From Macrostomum lignano (taxonomy: Eukaryota): a stretch of DNA of 64,000 bases. The position numbers and the translations under genes were made by a program. The notes under the pieces are model-generated. The model saw only the letters and a program-made list of their open reading frames with translations. It made no database searches and was not told where the DNA came from. This document shows positions 36,047-62,900 of the stretch, in pieces (position 1 is the stretch's first letter; each line of letters opens with the position of its first letter). The stretch lies in the NCBI GenBank assembly GCA_002269645.1, contig NIVC01000418.1:1-64000 (forward strand). Direction: 5' to 3'.

Positions 36047-36950
36047 GCTGAAGGGTTTGAAGGTCTCCTGATAAAGGGTTTGAAGGTCTCCTGATGAAGG
36101 GTTTGAAGGTTTCATTATGAATGGTTTGAAGGTCTCCTGATAAAGGGTTTGAACGTCTCCTGATAAAGGATTTGAAGGTCTCCTGATGAAGGGTTTGAAG
36201 GTTTCATGATGAAGGGTTTGAAAGTCTCCTGATGAAGGGTTTGAAGGTTTCATGATGAAGGGTTTGAAGGTTTCATGATAAAGGGTTTGAAGGTTTCATG
36301 ATAAAGGGTTTGAATGTCTCCTGGTGAAGGGTTTGAAGGTTTCATGATAAAGGGTTTGAATGTCTCCTGATGAAGGGTTTGAAGGTCTCCTGATGAAGGG
36401 TTTGAAGGTTTCATGATGAAGGGTTTGAAGGTCTCCCGATGAAGGGCTTGAAGGTTTAATGATGAAGGGTTTGAAAGTCTCCTGATGAAGGGTTTGAAGG
36501 TTTCATGATAAAGGCTTTGAAGGTCTCCTGATGAAGGGCTTGAAAGTTTCATTATGAAGGATTTGAAGGTTTCATGATGAAGGATTTGAAGGTTTCATGA
36601 TGAAGGATTTGAAGGTTTCATGATGAAGGGTTTGAAGGTTTCATGATGAAGGATTTGAAGGTTTCATGATGAAGGGTTTGAAGGTTTCATGATGAAGGGC
36701 TTGAGGGTTTCATGATGAAGGGCTTGAAGGTTTCATGATGAATGGCTTGAAGGTTTCATGATGAAGGGCTTGAAGGTTTCATGATGAAGGGCTTGAAGGT
36801 TTCATGATGAAGGATTTGAAGGTTTCATTATGAAGGGCTTGAAGGTTTCATGATGAAGGGCTTGAAGGTTTCATGATGAAGGGCTTGAAGGTTTCATGAT
36901 GAAGGATTTGAAAGTTTCATGATGAAGGGTTTGAAAGTCTCCTGGTCCGA
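36047..36950. repeat. 23-bp minisatellite
   Basis: (GAAGGGTTTGAAGGTTTCATGAT)n. Confidence 0.93.
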
Positions 36951-37477
36951 ATGGTCTGAGTTCACCTCAGGAAATTCCTGAAGGGCTATCTGTGAATCCT
37001 AAAGTCTGGGTTGGAAGTGCTTTAGCCCACACTTACCAAGAATTTCGAATTTATAAAATGATGTCATAACTAACACAGCCAGCTCATAGAGTACTTGGCT
37101 TTGAAAAAATTGCTTTAAAAGTTGTTATAGTTTGTTTCTTAAAGAAAAACTACTGGTCCGTTTACAGCAAAAAGCACGAGCCCTCAAAGCACAAGTTCTA
37201 TCTGACTTAAAATGTCAGCATCGTCTTTGAGCCTCGGCATCTCAGTTATTAGAAACATATAAAGCCTATAGTGCACTTCAATGGCCTTAACGAGAAGCCG
37301 CTAAGCTGATAGCATTCCTACAAGGCAGTAGCCATTTCTGGATTGGATCATAGCCAAAAATAAAATAAGGACTAAGTACTACCTTGTACCATAAGGCTGT
37401 AGATACGAGCATTGCAATGATCCACGGTGTGCTAAAAATAGAACAGGGTATTACCTAGTAATATACACAGGGTGCTG

Positions 37478-37685
<208 letters not shown>

Positions 37686-37971
37686 TGAATTTATAAAGAC
37701 ACTTTATTATCTCAATGCAACAGCAAGACTGCAAGGCCAGACTCTACAAGGCAGTGCCCTGTTTCTCCCCAAGCCGAGTGAATTGTGTTCGCCCCAACAC
37801 GGCACCGGCGTCACTCACCGAAATGAGGTCTCAGATAGCGCACAGTGGGACCAGAATACGAGGTAGTGCCCAGTTTCAAGTGGGTTCAATACGCACTGCA
37901 GCTGCCTGGGCCAAGAAGCTTAGACAGTCGTTCGTTAGTTCGCTGTTCACGCCCTGACGAAGGACAGCAGA

Positions 37972-38479
37972 ATGGCTGGTAAGCAACCACGCGATCCGTT
38001 CAAAGATTTCTATATGCCAGGTGAAAGCGAGGAGTCCAAGGAGGAGCTCAGGAGAAATACTGCAGCAACTGCTACTCAACTGGTTCAGCCTACGCCGTCT
38101 GCAATTTTTACTAATCCTGAGCTCATTGCCAAGATTGATGCAGGTAGAATGCGTTGGTTTCCATTCTGTCCTGTCCTGTCCTGTCCTGTCCTGTCCTCTC
38201 CTGTCCTGTCCTGTCCTGTCCTGTCCTGTCCTGTCCTGTCCTGTCCTCTCCTGTCCTGTCCTGTCCTGTCCTCTCCTGTCCTCTCCTGTCCTGTCCTCTC
38301 CTGTCCTGTCTTGTCCTGATATAATCCGTTCATTTTTGCACAGATCGACGTACCAAGAAACAATCAAACTTATTTCAGCAAAGAAGGAGAAAGCAGAGCA
38401 AGAGAAGCAACAGCAGGAGCAGACTAAGCCAAAAGACTCAACCGGAAGTAGTGGGAGCTCCTCTGGCAAAACAGATTGA
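37972..38479 (+). CDS. Diverged small-protein paralog, copy 5 (~90 aa)
   Basis: Exon 1 37972-38143 MAGKQPRDPFKDFYMPGESEESKEELRRNTAATATQLVQPTPSAIFTNPELIAKIDA; phase-1 intron containing (CTGTC)n; probable exon 2 38379-38479 AKKEKAEQEKQQQEQTKPKDSTGSSGSSSGKTD*. Confidence 0.6.
38165..38317. repeat. (CTGTC)n in the intron of small-protein copy 5
   Basis: Direct reading. Confidence 0.93.
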
Positions 38480-38757
38480 TGATTCGAGCGGTCCACAAAT
38501 ACTGACATCAAGCCTTATGGCTCACATCCTTTGCTGAATAATATTTGATCTACCATTTAATTCAATTTGGTGAATTCAAGAAGTCCAGATAATTTTTTGT
38601 GCTTTTTCTTAATTAGCGACCAAATTTTGCATGCAATTTTCACCGAATACAAACTGTGCAAATCTGCTTTAGAATGTTTCCAATTTGACAGACAAAGCAA
38701 AAAGGAATTATTTGTGATTAAGGGGCCAACAAGCACCTCTGTGAATCTAAGAATCAT

Positions 38758-38960
38758 AGGGTGTCTGTCCCTGAGAATGGGAGCTAGGGTGTCTGTCCTT
38801 GATAATGGGAGCTTGGGTGTCTGTCCCTGAGAATGGGAGCTAGGGTGTCTGTCCCTGAGAATGGGAGCTAGGGTGTCTGTCCTTGAGAATGGGAGCTTGG
38901 GTGTCTGTCCCTGAGAATGGGAGAGTGTCCGTCCCTGAGAATGGGAGAGTGTCTGTCTGT
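38758..38960. repeat. ~28-29-bp minisatellite
   Basis: GGGTGTCTGTCCCTGAGAATGGGAGCTA units. Confidence 0.88.
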
Positions 38961-39319
38961 CACCCTGCAAATCTCTTGGTCTTTCCGAATGATTCCAAAG
39001 TCATCTACCACTAATTGTCTCCAGTTGACAGTGCTTAAAAGAAACAAAAGGGAAAATTGAAGAGCAAAATACTTACCACAGTCAGTCATTACAGCTGTTT
39101 CTATTTTTACGTAGCTACGAGCGTACTTTATAACCCACGGAATTCCCGCGCTCACACATTGCAAAGTGCGCTGGTTTTTCCGAGGTGCAGCCGAAGACTC
39201 GCCATCGCTTCAGCATAAATATTGTAAATTCTGTTCGAGACTTTGAACTCTCATCAGAAAACTGAAGAATCATACTCTTCAAGAAGCAGCAATTGTTGCA
39301 GCAACTCAAATCACTAGCA

Positions 39320-39642
39320 ATGTCCAGCCAGCAAGCCAGATCCGCCAGGCCAGTCGCCAAGGACCCGTTCAGGTTCTTCTACTACAAGGGCGAGAGCGAA
39401 GAGTCGAAGGCGATGCTACGCCGAATGGTCGGCGCCTCAGCCAGGGTTCTCGTGCAGCCCAGCATCAGCTGCGTCATCACCAATCCGGACCTGATGGAGC
39501 GGGTCAGAGGTGAGTGACTCACTGCTGCTTTGAGCATTTCTGCTTTTAGATTTCCTGTTTTTGGCTGCACCTGACTGAGACAATTTCACACCGCTGACTT
39601 GCAGAGTCTGACCAGAAGGGCAACGTCAGGTCGAGCGGCTGA
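39320..39642 (+). CDS. Small-protein cluster copy 6 (75 aa), inverted relative to copies 1-4
   Basis: Near-identical reverse complement of copy 4, including intron and exon 2. Confidence 0.65.
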
Positions 39643-39962
39643 GCGCCGGAGGACATCCCTTATATGATGTCATGCCTTTTTGTGCATAGATTTCAAATGA
39701 CAATAGCTTACAATGGAAACGCATTGAGTCAAATAAATGCTTTCTCTGCTCGAGCTGAGCACTGCTCTGTACAGACTCGGACTCATCTCTGCTTATAAAA
39801 TGTATGAACAATAAATTCCTTGGCCTGAGTAACATTGCTTTTATTGCAGTATTGGATTTTCAATACGTCAAAAATTTCTTTTTTTTGCTTTCTTGGCAAC
39901 AAGTCCATTATTCTAAAATACTTTCTAATAGTTTTAGCTTGTGGTGAAAAAATAATTGGCAA

Positions 39963-41472
39963 AGTGACTGGCGCTGACTGTAGATTGAGATTGGAGTGAC
40001 TGGCACTGACTATAGATTGAGATTGGAGTGACTGGCACTGACTATAGATGGAGACTGGAGTGACTTTCACCGACTGTAGATTGAGATAAGAGTGACTGGC
40101 ACTGACTATAGATTGAGATTGGAGTGACTTTCACTGACTGTAGATTGAGATTGGAGTGACTGACACTGACTGTAGATTGAGATTGGAGTGAGTTTCACTG
40201 ACTGTGAGATCGGAGTGACTGGCACTGACTATAGATTGAGATTGGAGTGACTTTCACTGACTGTAGATTGAGATCGGAGTGACTGGCACTGACTATAGAT
40301 TTAGATCGGAGTGACTGGCACTGACTATAGATTGAGATTGGAGTGACTTTCACTGACTGTAGATTGAGATTGGAGTGACTGACACTGACTGTAGATTGAG
40401 ATTGGAGTGAGTTTCACTGACTGTGAGATCGGAGTGACTGGCACTGACTATAGATTGAGATTGGAGTGACTTTCACTGACTGTAGATTGAGATCGGAGTG
40501 ACTGGCACTGACTATAGATTTAGATCGGAGTGACTGGCACTGACTATAAATTGAGATCAGAGTGACTTTCACTGACTGTAGATTGAGATCGGAGTGACTG
40601 GCACTGACTGTAGATTGAGATTGGAGTGACTGGCACTGACTATAGATTGAGATTTGAGTGGGTTTCACTGACTATAGATTGAGATTGGAGTGACTGGCAC
40701 TGACTGTAGATTGAGATCGGAGTGACTGACACTGACTGAAGATTGAGATCAGAGTGACTGGCACTGACTCTAGATTGAGATTGGAGTGACTTTCACCGAC
40801 TGTAGATTCAGATTGGAGTGACTGGCACTGACTATAGATTGAGATTGGAGTGAGTTTCACTGACTATAGATTGAGATTGGAGTGACTGGCACTGACTGTA
40901 GATTGAGATTAGAGTGACTGGCACTGACTGTAGATTGAGATCGGAGTGACTTTTACTGACTGTAGATTGAGATTGGAGTGGCTTTCATCGACTGTAGATT
41001 GAGATTGGAGTGACTGACACTGACTGAAGATTGAGATCAGAGTGACTGGCACTGACTATAGATTGAGATTGGAGTGAGTTTCACTGACTATAGATTGAGA
41101 TTGGAGTGACTGGCACTGACTGTAGATTGAGATTATAGTGACTGGCACTGACTGTAGATTGAGATCGGAGTGACTTTTACTGACTGAAGATTGAGATCAG
41201 AGTGACTGGCACTGACTATAGATTGAGATTGGAGTGACTGGCACTGACTATAGATTGAGATCGGAGTGACTGGCACTGACTATAGATTGAGATCGGAGTG
41301 ACTGGAACTGACTATAGATTGAGATTGGAGTGACTGGCACTGACTGTAGATTGAGATTGGAGTGACTGACACTGACTGAAGATTGAGATCAGAGTGACTG
41401 GCACTGACTGTAGATTGAGATTGGAGTGACTTTCATCGACTGTAGATTGAGATTGGAGTGACTGGCACTGAC
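39963..41472 (-). repeat. 32-bp minisatellite, inverted and expanded copy
   Basis: Reverse complement of the 33536-33898 unit. Confidence 0.93.
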
Positions 41473-41899
41473 TTATCACGTTAACGTAGTGCGTTACTGC
41501 TGGCTAGGTACACTAATACTTCATGCAATTATTATTTGCTTGAAACGTTTCTTTGATAAAATTAAACTGGCGAAACTAAGTCACGCCATATGGAGCTGGC
41601 AGATATTCTTTCTTCAATATACAGTGTAGTGTATTTTTAGTCCTAAACGGGTTTATATAAAATTTCCAGTAAATAAAAGACTAGTGTCGCCTCTTATTAC
41701 TTTAGTCGTCCTCAATTACTACATTTACACTTACCTGTAGTACGAACTTTATACGTTGCAGAAGAATTACGCTATTTCTGAAAAATTTCAGAAGATTCAC
41801 GCATTTGTAGAAAAGTGCAAACGGACGCTTGCGGGAGAAGCGACACGAAGGAAGGCTACGTGGATCGGAGGGAAGGCCACCACGGAAACGGAGCTAATC

Positions 41900-42290: not shown

Positions 42291-42545
42291 ATCCAATACA
42301 TGTTACACAGCTACAAATGCCCACTGTATTATAAAATTAGCATGCTAGAATCCTAATTTTCTAAACCAAAAACTCTATGAAAATCAATAAAGCTGTAAGA
42401 AAGGCAAAATAATACATGCATGTACGGTACATACTCCTGTCAAAAGCAATAACAATTTTTGTGCTAAAAAAAGAAATCCCAATTCTCCTTAATATACCTT
42501 TCTGTAAAACCTGTCCCCTAATTTTTTCTAAGAAACGTATCGTAC
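42290..42545 (+). repeat. Dispersed copy related to the right half of the 53.1-53.5 kb foldback
   Basis: Shared collinear blocks GAATCCTAATTTTCT, TAAGAAAGGCA, AAAGCAATAACAAT, TTTTCTAAGA.ACGTA. Confidence 0.55.
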
Positions 42546-43300
42546 TTGTTCTTGAAATTTACGTGTAAATTGTACATGCATGTACACTGTTTAAAATAAA
42601 TGGACGATGCATGCGTATGGACGTGCGCATGCGCATGGACGTGATGCATGCGTAGTGTGCACATTTCTTTCCTGAACTTTAATTGACGATTTGATAAACG
42701 TACTTCATATACAGAAAATTTACATAGCAAATTATCGGGACCACTTGTTTCTTGCTGCTGTCGACGCAGTACCACTAAGTGTAAATTTAATTAACTGCTT
42801 AACAATACTTTGCATTGTGTCATGCTGTTCGCTCATTATTCCACGCTTAGGAATCATTATTTTAGGCTTCTAAAAATACATTCATGAGACAATGTGTTTG
42901 TGTATATGGTTTTGTCATAGACAATGATAAATTTTAGTCACTCGTGGCTAATTCATGGCGAAAAATGAGGCTCGTTTAAAAGCATTGTACTAAACGTTCA
43001 ATGATTGAAAAACATTGTCGCTAGTCAGTGCTTTTAGATAATGTTTTGTCTATGGTAAAAACTGTCGCAACTTTGATTTCACTTTATAGCCTGTGGTTCT
43101 AGCGTCACTTCTGGATAATGTCCTTGAGTTCTGGATAATGTCCACGACTTGTGGATAATGTCCACAATTTATTTAGAAAACAGCATACCACACAGTAACA
43201 ATAAAATTCAATACAACAATGCACAGTAACAAAAAGGTAACAAAAAAACTAGGAAATACTCTTGAAATTTTGGCATATAGTGTCAGTTGCCCATAAATTC

Positions 43301-44883
43301 TCACAGACTGCATTGGTTGAACGTGCAGTTTTGCATAACGAAGATGTTCTTGCCATTTGGATGAGCGTTTGCGAAGTTGACCGCCTCCTGGACCGTTGAG
43401 CTCTGGATGTTGACTGGGCACACGCTCGTGTTGATTGCTGGGCTATCTGTTGTACTGGCTGATGGGCACGCGCTCGTAATAACATGGCCGTTTGAATCAG
43501 GTGTAGTGTTTTTCTCCATGTCCAGTACCTTGGTTACGGCGTCGCTGCACTTCTTTAGCACCTTGTCACGTCTGATTGAGAGATATCGGCGAACGGTTTT
43601 TTCGCACTTCTGGCCAGTTATCGCCATGATGTCGGCCATGGAATGCCCAGCTGCTTCTAAGTCGCACACCCTGCTGACTCTAAAATATTGGGCAAACGGT
43701 ATTACACAATTGTAAGCATCTTGAGGCATTGCCTAAAGGCTAAATTAAGCTACACCTTTGGCAAAGGAGATTTACCTGATGCAGTGGTTGGTGTAAACTT
43801 TGGATAGCTTGGCCTTCCCACTCAGCGTCTTCATAAAGTTGTTGAGATAGTTTACGCCTCTCTTCTGCTTAGCACAAAACCGCCGTGCTCCAGTCGGCGA
43901 ATTTCTTAGCGGTCTTGGGAACAGAGAATTGTCCTTCGTTTCACCAGGCAGGAGAGACAAATACTCATCTATAATTGCTGTGTCATATATCCTGGCCTGC
44001 TTGATTTCGACGTCTCTTTTGGCTTTCGCCGGATCAGCTGTCCTGTTCTTGGTCTTCGACGATGATAGTGCGTAGTATATCCTTCCGTCTGAGTCGCTTT
44101 CTCTAACCAATCCTTTGTCTCCAAGCTCGCAAGGTGCTCTCTGCCTCGTTCTCCCAGTCCGTACAGCAGCCGAAACAGCATCTCGTCCTGTGTAACTTCG
44201 GCAGTTGAGCGGTCAAAGTAAAGACGCAGCTTTTGCATGTCTCCTTCCTCAATTGGAGGAAACGGTCGAACCTGACCTCCTGAGGATTGCCACTCACGGA
44301 CTTTGAACCGCAGTAGACGATTAGCTCCGGAAAATTCTTCTTCGCTAAGAATGTTAATGTTGAGTCCCGCAATCATTGTCAAATAGCGTTGGATTCCAGC
44401 ACGTATGCAGACTAGGCTTGACGGCGAATAGCTGCCTCCGTCAGCGCGTCGTAGTTTGAAATAGAAATACCTCAGAAACTCTGCCAGCGTGGCAGTAGTC
44501 AATTCGTGCACGGCTGCTCCATGCTCAGCTAGAAAGTTGACAAAACTTGAGCCGTATGCCAACATCTGCTCCCGAGTCTTGCTCGGCAAACTTGCAACTT
44601 CTTCGCGTGCCATCGTTTCAGTTATATCGAGCGGCACTGCCGGTCCTTCGGTCATGCATGAGACTTCTTCCACGTCTTCATTTTCATCCGGTAGCAACGG
44701 CAATTCGTCACTTGCTCCTCCCTCTTCGATGTACTTGATAAATGTGGCTAGGTCTTCGTCAACTGCGAAGTCGTTTCCCGAAGTCGATAGCATTGAAATA
44801 AAATCCATTTCGGAGCGTGTGACACCAGAGAGACAACTAATCGGCAAGTTAGCCCAGTTAATCAGATGCACTTGGTCTGCCAT
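43301..44883 (-). CDS. Tyrosine recombinase of Crypton/DUF3504 type; one 96-nt intron and one frameshift (~44112)
   Basis: N-domain LAEFLRYFYFKLRRADGGSYSPSSLVCIRAGIQRYL; catalytic R in GERGREHL; YTNHCIR spans intron 43775-43680 (GT-AG) and continues VSRVCDLEAAGHSMADIMAITGQKCEKTVRRY (HxxR, TG-x, catalytic Y). Confidence 0.85.
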
Positions 44884-45057
44884 GATGCTTTTCTTGTAGC
44901 AGGGTTATTTGAGAGCTTTCATTTTCTCCACCCTCTCTCTCCTCTGTGCCTTTTTTCTTTGAAAACAGTCTATGGCCAAAAACTATGATAAGCAGCCTAT
45001 GGCCATACAAGTTCAACCAAATATTTTGTCTATGGTACTTCCGAGCGACAATGAAGC

Positions 45058-45218
45058 TAGACAAAGGTCGGAACTCAGGATAATGGGTGGGGGCACTCGT
45101 GCGTTGAATTCAGCAACACCATAGACACTCGTGCGCTACGCGCACTCGTGATCTAGGCGTTGCTGAATTTAGCACACTCGTGCCCCCACCCATTATCCTG
45201 AGTTCCGACCTTCGTCTA
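45058..45218. repeat. Imperfect palindrome, 63-bp arms with 35-bp spacer
   Basis: Arm 45058-45120 matches the reverse complement of 45156-45218 at about 56/63 positions; four direct CACTCGTG copies. Confidence 0.9.
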
Positions 45219-47306
45219 ACCACCCATTAGGAATAGAAACTCACAGGAAAGTTACGCATTTTAACACATGCGCTAACAAATATATGTATCATTTTGGAGG
45301 GGTTTTTAGGGGTATAGCAATCAAGCCAGATTGTTGCAGGCTTTGAATGTCTATGGCCGAAGCCACACAACTAAGGCTAGCTGGAGATAAACCAATGTAC
45401 ACATGTAACAATTTTGATTTATAGTTATAGTATAGCATATACGAGCCTATAAAGTTGAGCGTTGTGAGTGTCGCTGATGCAAAATCTATCTTAAACTGTA
45501 GCAACAGCGCAGCTAGCGTATACTTTTGGCAAAAAAGCTACAGAAATTTAAAAAATAGGATTTTTATTTCTGGGGCACATGTATCTACTAGATGTTAATT
45601 CACCAGATGTGTTTGCTCGTTTTTCTGCTTGATTTTTATTTTTAATCTAAATTTTTATTAAAAAATATGGGGATTATATATTCCTGCAGATTTAACTATA
45701 AAAGATAAAGATATGAGTGACTGTTTCGATTGCATGCCGCGATAACTTGACAAGTGACAAGCCTAAATCCGAAGAATATCTGATTGTAAACAAAATATCC
45801 AATGAATATAGTTAATGTATGATTAAGGTAAACTTTTGGTTTGTTAATAAGTAATATAAATATACACAGATTATATTGTTAAACAGAAACGCTTTTTCTT
45901 TTTGACACAAGTACAGTTAGCAAATTTTTAACTTAGGGACTTAAAATATCTTTTTAAAGTGCATGAGCGCTTTTGCTGAAATGACCTTGTTCATCGTATA
46001 ACTATCTCTTAATAAATGATAAAATTATATAATATTATAGTTATGTCGCGCCTAGAAATAAATTCTGTTGTTTCATAATTTGTTACTTAATAATTAACTC
46101 GGAGAGACTCTAAAAAATAACTGAGAGTTTCCTTCATTTTTAGCAACATTTTCCTTGTTGAAATTTCATAATTTCAGTTACACTGTATATAATTTTACAC
46201 TATTTATTTTGCTAAAAGAATTGCTAAAGAATTAAAAATTTTTATTCAGGCATGTCTCTACTCAGTATTGTTGACTTAGGCTGGTCACTGACGACGCTGA
46301 CTCACACTTGCTGGTGTAAAATCAAAATGAAACTATTTCTATTTGAGTAACAATAGGTAGGCCTAAACTAATACTAGATACATAATACATTAGCATTAGG
46401 ATCCAATGTTAGATCTTTATTATTAATATTAGTATGGCCTGTTCTAGGTCTCTATAAATACCAAAATATATTTAAGCTTATTTCAGAAGTATATAGAGCC
46501 TAAGAAAATAGCTTGAAATGATTAAAAATATATATATTGTACTTATGCTACTTTTTATGAAACTATGGTTTTTAGCATTCCCTTTTATATATAAATTTTA
46601 TATTGAATATACATATATTATACACAAAGTTCTACAAATAACTGGCTCTAAAAACTATTTAAACAAAGAAAAGTTTTCACAAAATAATTTTATGTTGCTA
46701 TTACTTGTTTTTATTTGATAACTTCTTTTTAAATTAAGTAGCATAAAGGGCCAACTATTTGACATGTTTTTCTAATTTCATCAAGTTCAACTTTATATAT
46801 AAAAATTGGTCATCTTTATCATGTATATTTCACATCTTCTAGAACATCTAAAAGTAAAATTTTTCCATTGAACAAAACTACAAAAAATAAAATAAAATAA
46901 AATATGACTTCATAGATTTCTACCAAAATTGTCTTTTTTTATTTCATTAACAATATATTTTATTATTTTAAAAAACCTTTTATTCCAAATAGAATAATAG
47001 TCTTTTTTATTATGGCAAAAATTCTTTTATCCCCTAGCATAACTATGACACAAAACACCTAGATAAAGATATCAGTATGCCATGCTCTTTAATATGATTA
47101 GAAATAGTCTTAATTTTTCATCAAGAATATGACTTTGTAGACCATGGAAGTAAAACTCTTAAAATTAACTATATGGTGATTGTTCTAGCTAAATTTATAC
47201 ATAGTAATGTTTTGTTTTTTACATTTTTAAGTAGATCTTTAACTTTATCTTTAAGCTGAGACTCGCTGCCACCACACTAGGCCACACTGGCCCCACCCTA
47301 GTTGCC

Positions 47307-48577
47307 ATGGCAACAGCCATAACTCTACTATGTGGCATCCCCGCTGTTCAACACATTGCCACTCGCCATTTATTCGCCAAAACCGAAGTTGACTTTGCCA
47401 CTTGTGCTGGGTGCGAGTGCTGGGACACGATCAGCGTGGGATCGAGAGAGACGCCTGGACACCATGCCTATCACAGCGTTTACTGGAATAGCAATGGGTG
47501 CACATTGGCCATGTACTGCCTCACTGTGCTGCAGGTGTGCAATCTTATAGTGTTTGTGTATTTTATGAATAAAAAGGGCTTTTGTGAATCGATAAATCTC
47601 CCATAAAGGGGATATTGTGAATCGATAAATCTCCCATAAAGAGAGAATATTGAGAATCGATAAATCTCCCATAAAGGGGATATTGTGAATCGATAAATCT
47701 CCCATAAAGGGGATATTGTGAATCGTTAAATCTCCCATAAAGGGGATATTGTGAATCGATAAATCTTCCTTAAAGGGGGGATATTGTGAATTGCTATATC
47801 TCCCATAAACGAGATAATTGTGAATCACCAAGTGTCACATACAACAAGTTTCAACATAGAACGGATAGGTTAAGAAACAGCGAGTGTTTTCTGATTGCAC
47901 TGCTAGTTTATGATGAAGTGTTTGAATTTGAAGCCACTCCAAGGTCACCCTTGTTGTAATCAAAGCATAATTTAATGATGAAATCATCATCACAGGCGCT
48001 GCTATGTTACAAAGCTGTCGAGAGCCTCACCTGCATTGTCATGCGCCACGGCCTCAGTAAACTTCGTCCAGCTTTCGTCTGCCTAACTTTGCTCAACATC
48101 TATCCCAACTATTACTCCTGGTGGAGCTATTTAATGTACCTGAACGAGAAGACGCCAATGTACAGTCTTATTAGGCATCATATGTACTTTTACGCTAGCG
48201 AGCTAATCGTTGCCGCGCTAGTATTGCACCTGTGCAATGTCGAATCGGCTATCAATCGAGTCAAGTTGTCAATTGTGTTCTGCTTAGCGGCGTCGCACCT
48301 GGTCAGCGGATTCGCCGATCATTACCTGTTCGACCCGGCATCTGCGGCTGTGCGAGCCAGTAGGCTGGCTTCTTTCATGCACCACTCGAGAAATGCCGGC
48401 CTCATGCTGCCAGACTTGGCTCACGTATTGGTTTCTGGACGATATCTGCAGCCAATGCTGGCCAAAGCCAACACAGTTGAAGGCTTGCAGCTCGAGTCGC
48501 CTTGGAGCTGCTGGTGGCGGTGGGCCATACTATTGGCCGTCTCAATGCTGCTGTTTTGTGTCAGCCAGGCGCTGTAA
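47307..48577 (+). CDS. Uncharacterised multi-pass membrane protein (~269 aa, 2 exons)
   Basis: Exons 47307-47534 and 47996-48577 join in phase 0 (LQ|ALLCY). Several hydrophobic segments; motifs CAGCECWD, YHSVYWN, YPNYYSWWSYLMYLNE, SELIVAALVLHL, RNAGLMLPDLAH. The start codon is not certain. Confidence 0.7.
47585..47826. repeat. ~33-34-bp minisatellite in the membrane-protein intron
   Basis: GTGAATCGATAAATCTCCCATAAAGGGGATATT. Confidence 0.88.
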
Positions 48578-52306: not shown

Positions 52307-55300
52307 GTATTTTTCCTGGACCGTCTTCACGTGCTCAGTCAGCCTGGCGGCAACGCGAAGTTACCGCACCAACTGGAACGGTGCGTGCCCTTCCTGGACC
52401 TGCGCCGGATCCGTGTACCCGAAACGAACGCCTGCCGCATAGAATTCGGCGTGGCCTCTCCCGACGGCAGCGTCGGCGACGGGCTGCAGTTTTCCTGCAG
52501 CCTGGAGAATGACTGCGCCAAGATTGTCGCCCACGTTACGGCCTGCCTGCGAATGCACCTGCCCCAGGTGGGCAGTCGCCTAGTGGAAGTCAGCCTGCCC
52601 AACAGGTGGATGCTGGAGGTGCTCATCGCCGAGCTGGGTACCTCCTTAGTCCAATCACAGGCCATATCGGACAAGTGCGGCCACTTCGCTTCGGCCTACG
52701 ATCTGTACTCGAGCTACCTGGGCGTGACGGCACAACCCGAGATCAAATGGGACGTGGACACGATCTATTTTTCGCAGGGCACGCACACCTTTTGCCTGAG
52801 AGATTTCGCGGATTCCAAGCAGGAAGAATTCTCTGCAGTGCTTGGCGCGCTGGCGTTTAACGACTATTTTAATGGTCTGGATTGCTCGGGAGTTCGACTG
52901 AGCGACAGCTTCGTAAGTGTCATCTGGAAATGGCCTGTCTTCTCTGGCGGGGGGCGTGCGTGCGTTTCACAAGCTCAAAATGCGATTGCTGAATCATGGT
53001 TTGTTATCGAATTGCCCGCCGAGATTTTCCTGCCGAACTTTTCCCGCAATGCTTTTTTTCCTGCAGCAGTTTTAGCCCAAGGACGGGACGGGAAAATACG
53101 TTTCTTAAAAAAAGTTAAGGAGGCTGGTTTTCGCCGAAAAGTACACTACGGAGATCGGAAGTTTTCATTTTTCAGCACAAAATTGTTATTGCTTTCGATA
53201 GGAGGCAGACCCAATGTTCATCTTTTGATATATTGTGCCTTTCTTATAGCTCTATTGATATGTATTAAGCTTTTGGATTCGTAACAGATTCATAAAACCA
53301 AAGAGTCGAGCTGTGCCATGCATTTTTATGATTTTAAGGTACAGCAAATTGTACATGTACGTAGAATAAAAAGTTAGCATCGAATCCTAATTTTCTGAAC
53401 GAAAAACTTTATGAATATCAATAGAGCTATAAGAAAGGCACAAAATATCAAAAAATGAACATTGGATTTGCCTCCTATCGAAAGCAATAACAATAACAAG
53501 AAAACCAGCCTCTCTTAACTTTTTCTAAGAGACGTAGTTTCCCGTCCTTTCAGTTGAGTAGTCTGCGTTGCCTCCCAATGCTTAGTAAGTCTTAATAAAG
53601 AGATTTAGGGCACAAAAAGCGACCGGCGTATGCATGAATTAGTAGCTCACAGACGTACCCCTGTATGTATATAGAAATGAAAAACTACGAGAAAAATACG
53701 CATTTGATATGCAGTTACTATCGGAACTTTTTGATCGAGTTAAATCTCTTCATTAAGAGTTACGTTATTAGAAACACACAATCTCAGTGTGTCAACAGTT
53801 ATCTATCCTTCAGAAAAGCGATTGCCTACCATCCAAGCTAGTCATTAATATCACTAGTTTAATACGCTACTACCACAACGGTTTGCCTTCGCAGTTCATA
53901 AAGAGCGTCGGGTTTCTGCTCACTTACAACGTCACTCTAAACCAGCTGCTTCTCTCTGGGTGCAATTTGAAAAAGTAAGAACCATGAACGTTGATTAAGC
54001 ACCAAAGTTAGACTTTAATACACATTTTATAATATTAATATGTGCTTGAACTATTTTAGCGACTTTCTCCGAGCATTTGCTAGTGCAGTAGAGAAGAATT
54101 CAGGACTCAAACTCACGGATTTGGACTTATCGGACAATAAATTTGATGGAGACGATAAAGGTACGTTGTTAACCTTGATTCATCAAAAGGATGCAGAATT
54201 TAATTAGAAGTGCTAAGCTTCTTACCGATGTGTCTAGAGTTCTCGATTGCTGAATCATGGTTTCTAATCGGTGAGCTAGAGTTCTCGATTGCTGAATCAT
54301 GGTTTGTTATCGGTGAGCTAGAGTTCTCGATTGCTGAATCATGGTTTCTAACCAGTGAGCTAGAGTTCTCGATTGCTGAATCATGGTTTGTTATCAGTGA
54401 GCTAGAGTTCTCGATTGCTGAATCATGGTTTGTTATCAGTGAGCTAGAGTTCTCGATTGCTGAATCATGGTTTGTTATCAGTGAGCTAGAGTTCTTGATT
54501 GCTGAATCATGGTTTGTTATCGGTGAGCTAGAGTTCTCGATTGCTGAATCATGGTTTGTTATCCGTGAGCTAGAGTTCTCGATTGCTGAATCATGGTTTC
54601 TAATCAGTGAGCTAGAGTTCTCGATTGCTGAATCTTGGTTTCTAATCAGTGAGCTAGAGTTCTTGATTGCTGAATCATGGTTTGTTATCAGTGAGCTAGA
54701 GTTCTCGATTGCTGAATCATGGTTTCTAATCAGTGAGCTAGAGTTCTCGATTGCTGAATCATGGTTTCTAATCAGTGAGCTAGAGTTCTTGATTGCTGAA
54801 TCATGGTTTGTTATCAGTGAGCTAGAGTTCTTGATTGCTGAATCATGGTTTGTTATCAGTGAGCTAGAGTTCTCGATTGCTGAATCATGGTTTGTTATCG
54901 GTGAGCTAGAGTTCTCGATTGCTGAATCATGGTTTGTTATCCGTGAGCTAGAGTTCTCGATTGCTGAATCATGGTTTGTTATCCGTGAGCTAGAGTTCTC
55001 GATTGCTGAATCATGGTTTCTAATCAGTGAGCTAGAGTTCTCGATTGCTGAATCATGGTTTGTTATCAGTGAGCTAGAGTTCTTGATTGCTGAATCATGG
55101 TTTGTTATCAGTGAGCTAGAGTTCTTGATTGCTGAATCATGGTTTGTTATCGGTGAGCTAGAGTTCTCGATTGCTGAATCATGGTTTGTTATCCGTGAGC
55201 TAGAGTTCTCGATTGCTGAATCATGGTTTGTTATCAGTGAGCTAGAGTTCTCGATTGCTGAATCTTGGTTTCTAATCAGTGAGCTAGAGTTCTTGATTGC

Positions 55301-59961: not shown

Positions 59962-62900
59962 CAGTTAGTTAGTTAGTAAGTAAGTAAGTTAGTTAGCTAG
60001 TAAGTAAGTAAGTTAGCTAGTTAGTTAGTTAGCTAGTTAGTTAGTTAGTTAATAAGTTAGTCAGTTAGTTAGTTCGTTAGTCAGTCAGTCAGCGATCGCC
60101 CATTTACAATGCGTTCACCTTTGACCCAACCCAGACTTCGGTGCGGGCACGAACCCGTTGGTTGATTCCATTCGCAAGTCCTCTGTTCGGCACCTCTCCA
60201 TTGGAGGCAATAATTTTCGAGGCTTTGCGAAAAAGTAATTGCTTAATTTATTACCTACTGTGGTTAGCAACAGGTTTTATTGTTTACCCCTGCTCTCAAC
60301 CCAAGCTTTGCCATAAACCAATTTTCAGGGATCAGTCTATGATACAGGAGTTCTCAGAGCTGGTTACCGAGGACAAATGCGTGAGCGAATCTTGCTGCTT
60401 TGGTGTTTATTAATGGCTTGGGAAAAATTAACAAAAGAAGGAGGTTAATTTTTTATAAAAAGAGTAAAAATGGGCAAGAAAGAGAATGGCAGTGATCAGA
60501 AATGAGAAGTAAAATTGATGAAAATGAAGAGCCTTTTATTAAAGCTTAAAGATGAGACATGACAGGGGTAGATGAGACATGACAGGAGTAGATGAGACAT
60601 GACAGGAGTAGATAAGACATGAAAGGAGTAGACGAGACATGACAGGAGTAGATGAGACATGACAGGAGTAGATGAGACATGACAGGAGTAGATGAGACAT
60701 GACACAGGTAGCTGAGACATGACACAGGTAGATGAGACATGACAGGAGTAGATGAGACATGACAGGAGTAGATGAGACATGACACAGGTAGATGAGACAT
60801 GACACAGGTAGATGAGACATGACACAGGTAGATGAGACATGACACAGGTAGATGAGACATGACACAGGTAGATGAGACATGACACAGGTAGATGAGACAT
60901 GACACAGGTAGATGAGACATGACACAGGTAGATGAGACATGACACAGGTAGATGAGACATGACACAGGTAGATGAGACATGACACAGGTAGATGAGACAT
61001 GACACAGGTAGATGAGACATGACAGGAGTAGATGAGACATGACACAGGTAGCTGAGACATAACACAGGTAGATGAGACATGACACAGGTAGATGAGACAT
61101 GACACAGGTAGATGAGACATGACACAGGGGATTTACAGAAAGGAGACACTCGCAAGTAGAGCCCCCTTTGACCCCACCTCAGAGGTTGACCTCTTTGTCA
61201 ATCAGAGGCGCCAAGCTGGAGCGCAACCTGTGTGTGCTGCTGAACGCGCTGGGCGAGTGCAACAACCTCACCCGCCTGGACATCTCCGACAATGGCGCCG
61301 GCGAATTAAGCGCCAAAGTTCTCGCCAAGGCGCTGTTCGTCAACAGCAGCCTGGTTGTGCTGCAACTGGACGGCAACAGAATCGGCGCCAAAGGACTTCG
61401 AGACATCGCCGAGTCGTTGCGATTCAACCAGACTCTGCTGCGACTCCCGGTGCCAGTGGCTGATGTTGCCGCTTCTGCTGGAGGCAGTCAGCAGCAGCAG
61501 CAGCTGGTGCAGGAGGCTCTGGACCTGCTGCAGGAAGGCCTGGTTCGTAACAATCAGAAAGTCGGTCGGCAGGTAAACTCTTTGCGGACACGTGCGTGGG
61601 GTGTTCGGGCTTCGTGAAGAGGGACATGAGTCGAAAATGAGTTATGAGTTATGAGCACATTCGAACTCAATTGGGATAATGAGGATTATCGCCGAACTCA
61701 ATTGGGATAATGTGGATTATCGCCGAACTCAATCGGGATGATGAGGATTATCGCCGAACTCAATCGGGATAATGTGGATTATCGCCGAACTCAATTGGGA
61801 TGATGAGGATTATTGCCGAACTCAATTGGGATAATGAGGATTATCGCCGAACTCAATCGGGATAATGGGGATTATCGCCGAACTCAATCGGGATAATGTG
61901 GATTATCGCCGAACTCCATTGGGATAATGAGGAACTTCCAGTCTTAAAATCGAATCCCGCACCCACCGCCCAGGTCACGGCCAAGGACTACCGCCTGCAC
62001 GCCGAGCTCAGCAACTACCAGTTCACCGCCGACAACCAGATTGCGTCAGCCTCGGTCAGCCTCGCCGCCGTCGCCAGCGTCGCTGCCGCGCCGGAAACCG
62101 GCAGGGCGGAAATCGACGAGCACGCAGAGCGCTGCCGGCGGGCAATAAAGGACGCTGAGTCAGCGAAGCGGCTCCTCATCCGGCTGCAGGTCGATGCCGA
62201 TGCTCCTGGAGGAGGCAGCAGCGGCGGTGGCAGCAGCAGCGGCAACGGCGGTGACTTTGCAATAAGCCGCTGCCTGACTGCCGACCTGCCGGCGCCGTCG
62301 CACGCGGCTCTGTCCGCCGACCTGGACGCCGCCCAGCTTGAGATGCTGCGCCTGGCCGCTGCCGCCTGCCCGACCAGCTTCGCCGAGGACTCCGGCTTGG
62401 CCGACTCGCTGAAGGCCCAGCTGCACGGCGAGAACTCCCGCTGCCGCATCGGCCTGGCCCGCGTGGCCGAGGCGCTGAGCCGGTCTGCGGGACCCGCACT
62501 GGCCGCTGAGCTGTCGTGAGTTATGAGAGCAACTGCTCTGGCGCTCTTTTTGTCACACTCGGTGTCACTCCATTTGTCACACTCGGTGTCACTCCATTTG
62601 TCACACTCGGTGTCACTCCCTTTGTCACACTCGGTGTCACTCCCTTTATCACACTCGGTGTCGCTCCCTTTGTCACACTCGGTGTCACTCCATTTGTCAC
62701 ACTCGGTGCCACTCCCTTTGTCACACTCGGTGTCACTCCCTTTGTCACACTCGGTGTCGCTCCCTTTGTCACACTCGTTGTCACTCCCTTTGTCACACTC
62801 GGTGTCACTCTCTTTGTCACACTCGGTGTCACTCTATTTGTCACACTCGGTGTCACTCTCTTTGTCACAATCAGTGTCACTTCCTTTGTCACACTCGGTG

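What the first reader, a model, noticed from the sequence alone, without database searches (positions are those of the whole stretch)
45058..45218. 161-bp palindrome with four CACTCGTG boxes next to the recombinase gene
Seen: 63-bp arms (~56/63 paired), a 35-bp centre, ~175 bp upstream of the ATG. CACTCGTG occurs four times in direct orientation (~45094, 45126, 45142, 45175); the outer two face each other in the hairpin and leave a 2-nt mismatch, which suggests the boxes are kept as oriented sites. Established: tyrosine recombinases act on inverted binding sites, and telomere resolvases such as phage N15 TelN cut a palindrome next to their own gene to make hairpin ends. Inference: this is the enzyme's target or origin, raising the possibility of cruciform recombination or hairpin-ended intermediates in an animal element.
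Basis: partly seen in the sequence, partly recalled or inferred. Interest (0 to 1): 0.72.

Follow-up and report, generated by a model that had tools for sequence, protein, structure and literature searches.

The report
Hairpin-forming end of a Crypton transposon
The 161-bp palindrome is real and is the conserved end-piece of a small "Crypton" jumping gene that moves with a tyrosine recombinase; its imperfections suggest that one DNA strand folds into a hairpin, which gives a testable idea of how these poorly understood animal transposons move.

Summary
Window 45058-45218 is a 161-bp imperfect palindrome (DNA fold z = -15.7) with four same-strand CACTCGTG boxes, 175 bp upstream of a minus-strand CryptonA-type tyrosine-recombinase gene that carries one frameshift and one intron.

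It is not a stray MITE. Every relative with enough upstream sequence (8 further lineages, 32-47% protein identity) has a 70-115-bp palindrome (z -10 to -16) in the same place. Copy comparisons put it inside the element. L017 and L016 become homologous exactly at an ACAATG hexamer a few bases outside the palindrome, and homology ends exactly after a second ACAATG at the other end. L009, L010 and L011 share a right end and then have three different flanks. The family also has 10-47-nt terminal inverted repeats, which have not been described for animal Cryptons.

The apex is GCGTAGC or GCGTTAGC, the known DNA "mini-hairpin" motif, on one strand only. Arm mismatches are G·A on that same strand 33 times against T·C 3 times.

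Best reading: a strand-specific hairpin recombination site, comparable to integron attC or CTX attP. This is inferred, not shown. The TelN-like telomere-resolution reading is not supported.

The parts
45058..45218 (-). 161-bp imperfect palindrome ('Pal'), the gene-upstream terminal module of the element. The hairpin-favouring strand is the minus (gene-sense) strand.
   Evidence: z -15.7; sense strand -75.6 against antisense -69.5 kcal/mol. Homologous structures in relatives.
45134..45142 (-). Apex CGCGTAGCG. It contains GCGTAGC, the GCGNAGC DNA mini-hairpin motif, on the gene strand only (the + strand reads GCTACGC).
   Evidence: This 9-mer occurs once in the window and once in L007, in each case at the apex of the palindrome. 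Motif properties are from PMC13037366. The covariance model hits the minus strand only, at 36.5 bits.
45126..45150 (-). Inner core: CAC-GA-GTGCGC-GTA-GCGCAC-GA-GTG on the gene strand. It consists of a 6-bp stem, tandem G.A sites on both sides and 3-bp outer stems. It includes the two inner CACTCGTG boxes (45126-45133 and 45143-45150).
   Evidence: The same layout occurs in L007, L009, L008 and L016. The stems covary: 8 of 9 pairs change on both sides, 0 of 500 shuffles match.
45094..45101 (+). Outer CACTCGTG box of one arm. It pairs with the box at 45175-45182 and leaves a GA/GA opposition on the gene strand.
45175..45182 (+). Outer CACTCGTG box of the other arm.
45072..45085 (+). Arm motif AACTCAGGATAATG. 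Its mirror copy is at 45191-45204 on the minus strand. The CATTATCC part recurs three times near the other end of the element.
45119..45126 (-). GTCTATGG motif inside the palindrome, present on one arm only. In the hairpin it pairs with CCTAGAT and leaves single-base bulges.
45044..45053 (-). X: the left terminal inverted repeat, CATTGTCGCT on the gene strand, 4 nt inside the palindrome.
   Evidence: 10-nt perfect inverted match to 43013-43022. It holds the same position and the same YATTGT start as the 14-47-nt inverted repeats of L006, L007, L010, L013, L014, L015 and L017. GCTTCATTG is shared with L001.
43013..43022 (-). X': the right terminal inverted repeat, AGCGACAATG on the gene strand. 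This is the proposed right end of the element.
   Evidence: By analogy with right ends that are mapped and finish in ...ACAAT(G) in L009/L010/L011 and L016/L017. In the window itself the boundary is inferred, not mapped.
45225..45230 (-). CTAATG, 6 nt outside the palindrome. It is a candidate left copy of the terminal short direct repeat (AATG shared with ...ACAATG at 43013).
   Evidence: Read. Analogy with ACAATG in L016/L017, ACAATA in L013, AATAATA in L007 and ATAATG in L009. Weak: only 4 of 6 bases match.
43013..45230 (-). Proposed extent of the whole element (~2.2 kb): short repeat, Pal, X, gene, arm-motif repeats, X'.
   Evidence: Inferred from the family architecture. The size is comparable to the ~1.94-kb mapped element of L017 and L016-E1.
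43301..44883 (-). CryptonA-type tyrosine-recombinase gene. Exon 1 is 44883-43776 with a frameshift near 44105, the intron is 43775-43680 (GT..AG), and exon 2 is 43679-43301.
   Evidence: ORFs and sequence. tblastn shows two frames meeting at 44116-44080. Homologues are 65-67% identical in Macrostomum lignano. Pfam gives weak QRICH1 and Phage_integrase hits. A profile hits XerA in the PDB. The intron position is shared with L001 and L005.
43107..43165 (-). Three tandem 20-bp repeats, each carrying the arm motif GGACATTATCCAG, just inside the right end.
   Evidence: Relatives likewise repeat their own arm motif near the right end: L007 GGCAGTAA, L006 TTTGCGGGC, L016/L017 CATTGTTG.
43044..43057 (+). 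TTTTGTCTATGGTA, a 14-bp direct repeat of 45024-45037. The two copies flank the gene inside the terminal repeats.
   Evidence: E 0.003. GTCTATGG enrichment.
45024..45037 (+). Second copy of TTTTGTCTATGGTA, lying between X and the gene.

Best explanation
The palindrome is the gene-upstream terminal cis element of a ~2.2-kb CryptonA-type DNA transposon. This copy is decayed by one frameshift.

Shown: the element family is built as short direct repeat (ACAATG type), then a 70-160-bp palindrome, then the left inverted repeat, then a single recombinase gene, then 2-3 further copies of the palindrome's arm motif, then the right inverted repeat ending in the same hexamer. The palindrome travels with the element.

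Inferred: the element excises as a circle. In that circle the two inverted repeats close up around the palindrome to make a dyad of about 190 bp. One strand of that dyad (the gene-sense strand here) folds into a long hairpin. The hairpin is capped by a GCGTAGC mini-hairpin and tolerates its imperfections as stacked G.A pairs. The folded or extruded form presents the crossover hexamer as duplex in the basal stem. The recombinase exchanges strands there with a similar hexamer in the target, much as integron attC or CTX-phage attP sites are used. The asymmetries (GNA apex, G.A sites, single-base bulges) tell the enzyme which strand and which edge to use.
For: Family-wide conservation. Palindromes with DNA-fold z of -10 to -16 lie 170-340 bp upstream of the ATG in L006, L007, L008, L009, L013, L014, L016 (two copies) and L017. 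L001 starts inside an arm that aligns 29/38 with the window's arm and X.

Boundaries. L017 and L016-E1 are 96-97% identical starting exactly at ACAATG left of the palindrome and ending exactly after ACAATG at the right, with unrelated flanks on both sides. L009, L010 and L011 are 100% identical up to ...ATATACAAT, then have three different flanks, and L010 still carries the last 9 nt of the palindrome.

Terminal inverted repeats of 10-47 nt start just inside the palindrome in 8 lineages.

Apex. GCGTAGC in the window, L007, L009 and L015. GCGTTAGC in L008, L013 and L014. cGTAg or cGCAg in L016/L017. Of all 64 GCNNNGC sequences only GNA loops form the very stable DNA mini-hairpin; Tm is 70 C for GCGTAGC and 69.5 C for GCGTTAGC, and the RNA form is much weaker (PMC13037366).

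Strand bias. Arm mismatches read as hairpin oppositions on the gene strand are G.A 33 against T.C 3. All three T.C are in L014, the lineage whose apex is flipped. The sense strand folds at least as well as the antisense strand in 9 of 9 cases, by 6-7 kcal/mol in the window and L009.

The core stems covary (95.8% paired, 8 of 9 pairs with double-sided changes, 0 of 500 shuffles). A covariance model of the core hits only one strand.

In the three families with mapped ends, the junction is always at the outer edge on the same side of the palindrome.
Against: There is no direct evidence for single-stranded or cruciform DNA, for circles, or for binding or cleavage. Covariation and dyad symmetry are equally expected for a duplex site bound by a dimer. 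The energy difference between strands is 1.1 kcal/mol or less in six of nine palindromes, and G.T against A.C oppositions show no bias (9 against 10). The apex is flipped relative to the gene in L014 and L015. L006 has a GCAG apex that is not a mini-hairpin motif. The window's own boundaries are inferred by analogy: its left repeat matches only 4 of 6, and a fifth CACTCGTG lies beyond the proposed right end. The relatives come from unidentified eukaryotes in metagenome and SRA assemblies, and each boundary rests on only 2-3 copies. L017 has a second inverted-repeat copy 49 nt beyond the mapped right junction, which is unexplained.
Confidence: 0.5

Rival explanations
1. It is a duplex attP/loxP-like site. 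The recombinase binds the inverted half-sites as a dimer or tetramer on double-stranded DNA. GCGTAGC is the asymmetric overlap region that sets direction. Recombination between palindromes of different copies builds and resolves tandem arrays.
For: The centre looks like a classic core: 6-10-bp inverted arms around a conserved asymmetric 7-bp GCGTAGC. Covariation keeps the dyad. Tandem arrays have a palindrome between units in L016, and L007 has a second recombinase gene directly after the first element. The palindromes of L016-E1 and L016-E2 are 91% identical while their genes are 64-66% identical, as expected if palindromes exchange.
Against: The mapped junctions of solitary copies lie at the outer hexamer, not at the centre, and the integrated palindromes are whole, not split into half-sites. 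A duplex reading does not explain why mismatches are G.A on one strand 33:3 and follow the apex orientation. It also does not explain why the variable apex bases obey the GNA/GNNA rule.
Confidence: 0.22
2. It is a replication or priming origin. The mini-hairpin-capped stem-loop on one strand starts complementary-strand synthesis on a single-stranded circular intermediate, or serves as an origin for the excised circle. It is not the strand-exchange site.
For: GCGTTAGC and GCGAAAGC mini-hairpins mark the complementary-strand origins of the ssDNA phages St-1, alpha3 and G4, and such motifs are said to be frequent at replication and transcription origins (PMC13037366). The features are strand-specific.
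Against: The element encodes no Rep or primase, only the recombinase. Arm motifs of the palindrome are repeated at the other end next to the terminal repeat, as expected for transposase-binding sites. The palindrome abuts the mapped crossover hexamer. This rival is compatible with, rather than exclusive of, the best explanation.
Confidence: 0.08
3. It is a promoter or regulatory element, or an RNA hairpin in the transcript, that controls recombinase expression.
For: It lies 170-340 bp upstream of the ATG in every lineage. The favoured strand is usually the sense strand. Tandem G.A pairs also occur in RNA (own knowledge).
Against: It sits within about 10 nt of the element's end, leaving no room for an upstream promoter inside the element. 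The spliced, transcript-like contigs L002 and L003 start downstream of where the palindrome would be. The apex motif is much less stable as RNA. The apex and the G.A strand are antisense in L014. Rfam has no match.
Confidence: 0.08
4. It is an independent palindromic MITE or foldback element that happened to insert next to the recombinase gene.
For: The outer 39 nt of the arms differ at one position while the inner part is more diverged, as in a MITE with terminal repeats. The ends read TA...TA. An arm motif recurs in a satellite 16 kb away.
Against: There is no second copy in the window and no target-site duplication other than the self-complementary TA. Homologous palindromes are in the same place in 9 lineages, with a conserved apex. 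Copy comparison puts it inside the element. Its motifs recur at the element's other end.
Confidence: 0.04
5. It is a telomere-resolvase-type target. The enzyme cuts the palindrome at its centre and seals hairpin ends, giving a linear hairpin-ended form, as with phage N15 TelN and telRL.
For: A large palindrome lies next to the gene of a tyrosine-nucleophile enzyme. Hairpin-prone DNA.
Against: The protein is a ~460-500-aa Cre/Xer-like CryptonA recombinase with no protelomerase match. The centre is odd and asymmetric (GTA, GTTA), not an even perfect dyad. Integrated copies have intact palindromes, and their junctions are at the outer hexamer.
Confidence: 0.03

Closest known systems
Crypton DNA transposons, CryptonA group (Goodwin 2003; Kojima & Jurka 2011, PMC3212892)
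   Same: A single tyrosine-recombinase gene with weak DUF3504/QRICH1-type similarity, no reverse transcriptase, and short (4-7 bp) direct repeats at both ends that match the Crypton circle-integration model. TATGG-like and CAATG-like short termini recall the TATGG termini of CryptonS.
   Different: The literature states that animal Cryptons have no terminal repeats and that Cryptons lack inverted repeats and conserved structural features. This family has 10-47-nt terminal inverted repeats, subterminal repeated arm motifs, and a 70-160-bp terminal palindrome with a conserved apex.
Integron attC sites recombined by IntI as folded single strands
   Same: An imperfect palindrome of similar size used by a tyrosine recombinase. 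Sequence is conserved mainly at the outer inverted motifs, where the crossover lies, while the interior varies but keeps pairing. Conserved unpaired or extrahelical features on one strand could dictate strand choice.
   Different: Integrons are bacterial, and the recombinase and site sequences are unrelated. Here the apex is also conserved, and folding has not been shown experimentally. The attC properties are from my own knowledge and were not tested here.
CTX-phage attP(+) hairpin used by XerC/XerD
   Same: A single-stranded forked hairpin rebuilds a duplex recombination site. Integration is by exchange of one strand pair. Tandem integrated copies matter.
   Different: CTX is a filamentous phage with its own rolling-circle replication. 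No source of single-stranded DNA is known for Cryptons. From my own knowledge.
DNA mini-hairpins GCGNAGC / GCGNNAGC (Hirao and co-workers; review PMC13037366)
   Same: The same 7- or 8-nt motif lies at the apex of the palindrome (GCGTAGC, GCGTTAGC). In phages G4, St-1 and alpha3 it caps origin hairpins on single-stranded DNA.
   Different: Those are primase or origin signals in bacterial ssDNA phages. Here the motif caps a transposon terminal palindrome in animals or other eukaryotes.
loxP/Cre and FRT/FLP core sites
   Same: Inverted half-sites surround a short asymmetric spacer that gives direction. The enzyme is of the same superfamily.
   Different: Those sites are 34-48 bp of perfect duplex with the crossover in the central spacer. 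Here the mapped junctions are 50-90 bp from the centre, and the arms carry strand-biased G.A mismatches.
Phage N15 TelN/telRL and other telomere resolvases
   Same: A palindrome lies next to the gene of a tyrosine-nucleophile enzyme.
   Different: The enzyme family is different. Resolvases cut an even, perfect dyad at its centre and produce hairpin-ended linear DNA. None of this is seen here.

Membership tests
Crypton (tyrosine-recombinase DNA transposon) | Encodes a tyrosine recombinase with the catalytic R...K...HxxR...Y signature and no reverse transcriptase or other transposase | tested here: met
   ERGRE, SKxKN, NHCIR and RRY are conserved in the window protein and in the alignment A2. 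Phage_integrase is above its cut-off for P0011, and a profile hits XerA. The mapped ~1.94-kb elements hold one ORF only. The usual third His/Trp is Q in the flatworm clade (read).
Crypton (tyrosine-recombinase DNA transposon) | Short (4-6 bp) direct repeats at the two termini, reflecting crossover with a similar target sequence | tested here: met
   ACAATG is at both ends of L017 and L016-E1, exactly where homology starts and stops. ACAATA in L013 and AATAATA in L007. In the window only AATG is shared (weak).
Crypton (tyrosine-recombinase DNA transposon) | Mobility: copies at different genomic sites | tested here: met
   Three different right flanks for identical copies in L009, L010 and L011. 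Different flanks on both sides for L017 against L016. Not testable for the window's own copy.
Crypton as classically described | No terminal inverted repeats or conserved terminal structure | tested here: not met
   Inverted terminal repeats of 10-47 nt in 8 lineages and a terminal palindrome in 9. This is the respect in which the family is a new variant.
CryptonA / DUF3504 lineage | Similarity of the recombinase to DUF3504 and QRICH1 domains | tested here: inconclusive
   QRICH1 at E 9e-5 to 4e-5 and DUF3504 at E 6.5e-4, all below Pfam's gathering scores.
Telomere resolvase system (TelN/telRL type) | Protelomerase-family enzyme | tested here: not met
   Pfam and PDB searches return only Phage_integrase, QRICH1, DUF3504 and XerA.
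Telomere resolvase system (TelN/telRL type) | Even, perfect dyad cut at its centre, with hairpin-ended linear products | tested here: not met
   The centre is an odd GTA or an asymmetric GTTA. Junctions lie at the outer hexamer. Hairpin-ended molecules cannot be tested with these tools.
MITE / foldback element | Dispersed solo copies with their own target-site duplications, independent of the recombinase gene | tested here: not met
   There is no other copy in the 64 kb. It is always attached to the gene in relatives. A census of the source genome was not possible.
Folded single-strand recombination site (integron attC / CTX attP type) | Imperfect palindrome whose conserved imperfections favour one strand | tested here: met
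   G.A 33 against T.C 3 on the strand carrying the GNA apex. Sense strand folds at least as well as antisense in 9 of 9. One-strand hits of the covariance model.
Folded single-strand recombination site (integron attC / CTX attP type) | The recombinase acts on the folded strand, and single-stranded DNA is an intermediate | not testable with these tools
   Needs biochemistry and detection of single-stranded or circular DNA.
DNA mini-hairpin motif | GCGNAGC or GCGNNAGC sequence at a hairpin apex | tested here: met
   Window, L007, L009, L015: GCGTAGC. L008, L013, L014: GCGTTAGC. The definition is from PMC13037366. L006 (GCAG) does not meet it. L016/L017 meet only the cGNAg part.
lox/FRT-type duplex core site | Inverted half-sites flanking a 6-8-bp asymmetric overlap in which strands are exchanged | tested here: inconclusive
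   The geometry fits (6-10-bp arms around GCGTAGC), but the mapped junctions are at the outer edge.

The most novel reading that the evidence does not exclude
A eukaryotic (animal) DNA transposon uses a folded single DNA strand as its recombination substrate. That substrate would be a long hairpin capped by a GCGNAGC mini-hairpin and stabilised by sheared G.A pairs, and it would be read by a tyrosine recombinase. This would be the first eukaryotic counterpart of integron attC or CTX attP recombination. It would imply a single-stranded or cruciform circular intermediate in Crypton transposition, possibly with hairpin-primed second-strand synthesis.
Probability: 0.35. Interest if true: 0.85.

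Novelty: new variant of a known kind. Interest (0 to 1): 0.72.

Why it matters
Cryptons are the least understood class of eukaryotic DNA transposons. Their ends are described as featureless, animal Cryptons are said to lack terminal repeats, and no transposition intermediate has been shown.

This family has a well-defined architecture: a short direct repeat, a terminal palindrome with a conserved apex, inverted repeats and subterminal binding-site repeats. That architecture supplies a structural signature for annotating such elements and their non-autonomous derivatives. It supplies mapped crossover hexamers. It supplies a concrete, cheap-to-test mechanism in which folded-strand and duplex substrates can be compared directly.

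Because CryptonA recombinases were domesticated into the vertebrate ZMYM2/3/4, QRICH1 and KCTD1 genes (PMC3212892), knowing what DNA shapes the ancestral enzyme recognised could also inform what those proteins bind.

If the folded-strand mechanism holds, it extends a recombination strategy known only from bacterial integrons and filamentous phages to animals.

Tried and rejected
- Other copies of the palindrome or of the gene in the window: none found.
- Exact look-up of the window's 304-aa ORF in public assemblies: not on record, so the source genome could not be censused.
- Scan of viral contigs for relatives: none.
- Rfam: only a sub-threshold chance hit inside the gene.
- Bacterial promoter and terminator scan: nothing, and not appropriate for a eukaryote.
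- G.T wobbles on the sense strand: I first thought these were also favoured, but the tally shows no bias (9 against 10). That argument is dropped.
- Weak inverted repeat at the 5' end of L001 (z -1.4): it is not a palindrome in its own right. The contig starts inside an arm homologous to the window's arm.
- GTCTATGG pairs, or the 14-bp repeat TTTTGTCTATGGTA, as the element's termini: rejected in favour of X/X' and the ACAATG-type hexamer once real boundaries were mapped in relatives. The motif is still enriched and unexplained.
- Palindrome as the insertion target rather than part of the element: rejected, because homology between independent copies begins outside it and L010 keeps its last 9 nt.
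- The eight-base 'box' as a sequence-specific protein site: in relatives only its central GA is conserved.
Full report
**1. The observation.**
Window 45058-45218 is an imperfect palindrome. The repeat finder reports arms 45058-45136 and 45140-45218, 79 nt, 82% complementary, around a 3-nt centre. As single-stranded DNA it folds at -69.8 kcal/mol, against -21.7 +/- 3.1 for 200 dinucleotide shuffles (z = -15.7). The outer 60 nt of the arms are 90% identical, and the outer 39 nt differ at one position.

CACTCGTG occurs at 45094, 45126, 45143 and 45175, all on the + strand. A fifth copy lies at 42939. That is 5 against 1.5 expected.

The neighbouring gene is on the minus strand with its ATG at 44883, 175 bp away.

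**2. The gene.**
Three minus-strand ORF pieces make one gene: 44883-43969, 44110-43772 and 43729-43301. There is a frameshift near 44105. tblastn shows two frames meeting between 44116 and 44080. There is a GT..AG intron at 43775-43680, directly after the NHCIR codons.

The joined product is 65-67% identical to two Macrostomum lignano 'Tyr recombinase domain-containing' proteins and 32-48% identical to nine further proteins from SRA and metagenome assemblies.

It carries the tyrosine-recombinase signature ERGRE, SKxKN, NHCIR, RRY. It has weak QRICH1/DUF3504 similarity. The family profile hits Phage_integrase above its cut-off in P0011 and XerA in the PDB. This is a CryptonA-type recombinase (Kojima & Jurka 2011, PMC3212892). 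The same intron position in L001 and L005 shows a eukaryotic host. Only one copy is in the window.

**3. Relatives have the same structure.**
I fetched 17 loci that encode relatives. Every lineage with enough upstream DNA has a large palindrome 170-340 bp upstream of the ATG:
- L006: 232-330
- L007: 7-120
- L008: 58-168
- L009: 373-481
- L013: 99-166
- L014: 43-131
- L016: 67-164 and 2161-2254
- L017: 530-627

Their DNA-fold z-scores run from -10 to -16, and no shuffle did as well. L015 has a degenerate version. L001, the closest relative with genomic flank, begins inside an arm that aligns with the window's arm and the following GCTTCATTG, 29 of 38 positions. Outside the apex the sequences are lineage-specific.

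**4. Where the element ends.**
L009, L010 and L011 come from three samples and carry the same protein. They are 100% identical up to ...AGAGTAATATACAAT and then continue with three unrelated sequences. L010 still begins with the last 9 nt of the palindrome.

L017 and the first element of L016 are 96-97% identical. Homology begins exactly at an ACAATG four bases to the left of the palindrome (L017:519, L016:56) and ends exactly after another ACAATG on the right (L017:2462, L016:2154). The flanks on both sides are unrelated.

The palindrome therefore lies inside the element, at its gene-upstream end. The element is bounded by a short direct repeat, as the Crypton model expects.

In eight lineages, the sequence just inside the palindrome ('X', starting YATTGT or TATTAT) recurs inverted at the far end ('X'', ending ACAATR). 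The lengths and identities are:
- L006: 47 nt
- L017: 21 nt, 90%
- L013: 20 nt
- L014: 17 nt
- L010: 16 nt, 100%
- L015: 16 nt, 100%
- L007: 14 nt, 100%
- Window: 10 nt, 100% (45053-45044 against 43022-43013)

The sequence immediately outside the palindrome repeats only the last 4-7 nt of X' (ACAATG, ACAATA, AATAATA, ATAATG; AATG in the window). That is what an integration crossover at that hexamer would leave.

Near the right end, each lineage repeats the arm motif of its own palindrome:
- Window: GGACATTATCCAG three times, at 43107-43165
- L007: GGCAGTAA
- L006: TTTGCGGGC
- L016/L017: CATTGTTG three times

By analogy the window's element spans about 45230 to 43013 (~2.2 kb). This is inferred, not mapped.

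**5. The centre.**
On the gene strand the window's centre reads CAC-GA-GTGCGC-GTA-GCGCAC-GA-GTG. The relatives read as follows:
- L007: GGCT-GA-AGCCGC-GTA-GCGGCT-GA-AGCC
- L009: GAC-GA-GGCTGC-GTA-GCAGCC-GA-GGC
- L016: TTC-GA-GGGCAC-G(C/T)A-GTGCCC-GA-GAA
- L008: GA-GGCCGC-GTTA-GCGGCC-GA
- L013: GTA-GGTCGC-GTTA-GCGACC-GTA

The 9-mer CGCGTAGCG occurs once in the window and once in L007, each time at the apex. On an alignment of eight cores, 95.8% of cells pair and 8 of 9 pairs show changes on both sides. No shuffle (0 of 500) and no slid register comes close.

So the dyad is maintained while its sequence changes. Three asymmetric features stay: the apex triplet or quadruplet, and a GA on each side in direct, not mirrored, orientation. 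In relatives the 8-mer is not conserved; only the GA is.

**6. What the asymmetries mean.**
GCGNAGC and GCGNNAGC are the 'mini-hairpin' DNA motifs: two G-C pairs plus a sheared G-A pair. Of all 64 GCNNNGC sequences only GNA loops form the structure. Tm is 70 C for GCGTAGC, 71 C for GCGCAGC and 69.5 C for GCGTTAGC. The RNA version is far weaker. GCGTTAGC and GCGAAAGC cap origin hairpins of the ssDNA phages St-1, alpha3 and G4 (PMC13037366).

The apexes here are:
- GCGTAGC: window, L007, L009, L015
- GCGTTAGC: L008, L013, L014
- cGTAg or cGCAg: L016/L017
- GCAG: L006, which does not fit the motif

The complementary strand (GCTACGC) is not a mini-hairpin.

I then tallied every arm mismatch as the opposition it would make in a hairpin of the gene strand. 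G.A/A.G appears 33 times and T.C/C.T 3 times. All three T.C are in L014, whose apex motif lies on the other strand. G.T against A.C shows no bias, 9 against 10.

In the window, L007, L009 and L016 the tandem GA sits in a pyrimidine-GA-purine context. From my own knowledge (Ebel 1992; Cheng, Chou & Reid 1992; not checked here), that context favours stable sheared tandem G.A pairs.

The gene strand folds at least as well as the other strand in 9 of 9 palindromes. The gap is 6.1 kcal/mol in the window and 7.0 in L009, but 1.1 or less in six others. A covariance model of the core matches one strand only, and finds no further copy in the window.

**7. Interpretation.**
Shown:
- The palindrome is a conserved, terminal, cis-acting part of a TIR-bearing CryptonA-like transposon family.
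- The strand-exchange point mapped by copy comparison is a hexamer at its outer edge, repeated at the other end.
- Its imperfections are strand-biased.

Inferred:
- After excision as a circle, X' and X would flank the palindrome and extend it to about 190 bp.
- One strand folds, or the dyad extrudes, into a hairpin whose basal stem is the duplex ACAATG/CATTGT.
- The recombinase exchanges strands there.
- The asymmetries select strand and side.

This resembles integron attC and CTX attP(+) (from my own knowledge).

I put about 0.85 on 'integral terminal recombination module of the Crypton'. I put about 0.45 on the strand-specific hairpin mechanism. The confidence of 0.5 given for the best explanation covers the whole statement.

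The main rival is a duplex lox-like site with GCGTAGC as the overlap. It explains the tandem arrays and the finding that the L016 palindromes are 91% identical while their genes are 64-66% identical. It does not explain the position of the junctions or the G.A bias. An origin or priming role is compatible with the mini-hairpin precedent, but the element encodes no replication protein.

The MITE and telomere-resolvase readings are disfavoured for these reasons:
- Constant linkage of the palindrome to the gene.
- Its position inside the mapped ends.
- An odd, asymmetric centre.
- A Cre/Xer-like enzyme.

**8. Comparison with what is known.**
The held literature says the following:
- Animal Cryptons have no terminal repeats (PMC3212892).
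- Cryptons are not associated with inverted repeats, and CryptonA copies have neither TIRs nor a described terminal structure (PMC13465315).
- Cryptons lack conserved structural features (PMC12130899).

Searches for Crypton together with palindrome, or with Macrostomum, found nothing relevant. The family is a Crypton by enzyme, gene content and short direct repeats. It departs from the description by having TIRs and a terminal palindrome. I therefore classify it as a new variant of a known kind.

**9. Limits.**
- The source genome could not be searched, so the window's own boundaries, copy number and possible solo palindromes are unknown.
- The relatives come from unidentified eukaryotes in metagenome and SRA assemblies, and each boundary rests on 2-3 copies.
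- The lineages share ancestry, so counts such as 33:3 are not independent events. The flipped case L014, in which apex and G.A strand flip together, argues against simple inheritance.
- Nothing here shows single-stranded DNA, circles, binding or cleavage.

Noticed in passing
window 61662-61933: A 31-bp satellite of 8.8 copies (CGAACTCAATTGGGATAATGAGGATTATCGC) shares the composite motif AACTCA(N0-6)GGATAATG with both arms of the palindrome. There are 8 hits in the window against 0 expected. It could be an amplified binding-site derivative of the element, or the source of its arm motif.
   Followed up: partly
window 43048, 44968, 45028, 45119(-), 45349; also L001:60,150 and L002:36,1678: GTCTATGG occurs 7 times in the window against 1.3 expected, and 5 of the 7 cluster around the recombinase gene. 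The same 8-mer lies upstream of the gene in two other species. An (A/G)TCTAT(G/T) motif recurs just inside the palindrome in L007, L013, L014 and L017. Its function is unknown; it could be a second binding site or a core promoter element.
   Followed up: partly
window 42939-42946 (with CATTGTCTATGAC at 42915-42927): A fifth CACTCGTG lies 67 nt beyond the proposed right end of the element, next to an inverted CATTGT. It may be the stump of a neighbouring element's palindrome, in a tandem arrangement like that in L016.
   Followed up: no
window 42330-42540 and 53096-53494: A ~200-bp sequence just beyond the Crypton is repeated at 74-76% identity in both orientations 10.6 kb away. This is another repeat family or a foldback structure.
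   Followed up: no
L016:1-4050: Two tandem elements. Their palindrome regions are 91% identical over 130 bp, but their recombinase genes are only 64-66% identical. This suggests exchange or homogenisation of the palindromes between subfamilies.
   Followed up: partly
L007:2118-2321: A second, paralogous recombinase gene starts about 160 bp after the right end of the first element and has no large palindrome of its own. This suggests nested or adjacent insertion.
   Followed up: no
L017:2463-2511: A 21-nt inverted copy of the left terminal repeat lies 49 nt beyond the point where homology with L016 ends. There are therefore two ACAATG sites at the right end, which suggests alternative ends or a recombinase-mediated deletion in L016.
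   Followed up: no
L017 (CALGXJ010000114.1): This eukaryotic transposon contig is binned in a 'Candidatus Kapabacteria' metagenome-assembled genome, so it is probably contamination of that bin.
   Followed up: no
L009:2431-2479: The contig ends in a Nextera adapter sequence (CTGTCTCTTATACACATCT...), which is an assembly artefact in the public record.
   Followed up: no
window 36049-41473, 47582-47826, 60550-63855: The window is unusually rich in minisatellites with units of 13-33 bp, up to 47 copies. One example is the 32-bp array at 39963-41473, just 1.5 kb beyond the element.
   Followed up: no
L009:2191-2244: A small second palindrome near the right end of L009 also contains GCGTAGC, on the same strand as the main apex. 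The element thus carries two mini-hairpin motifs in direct orientation.
   Followed up: no
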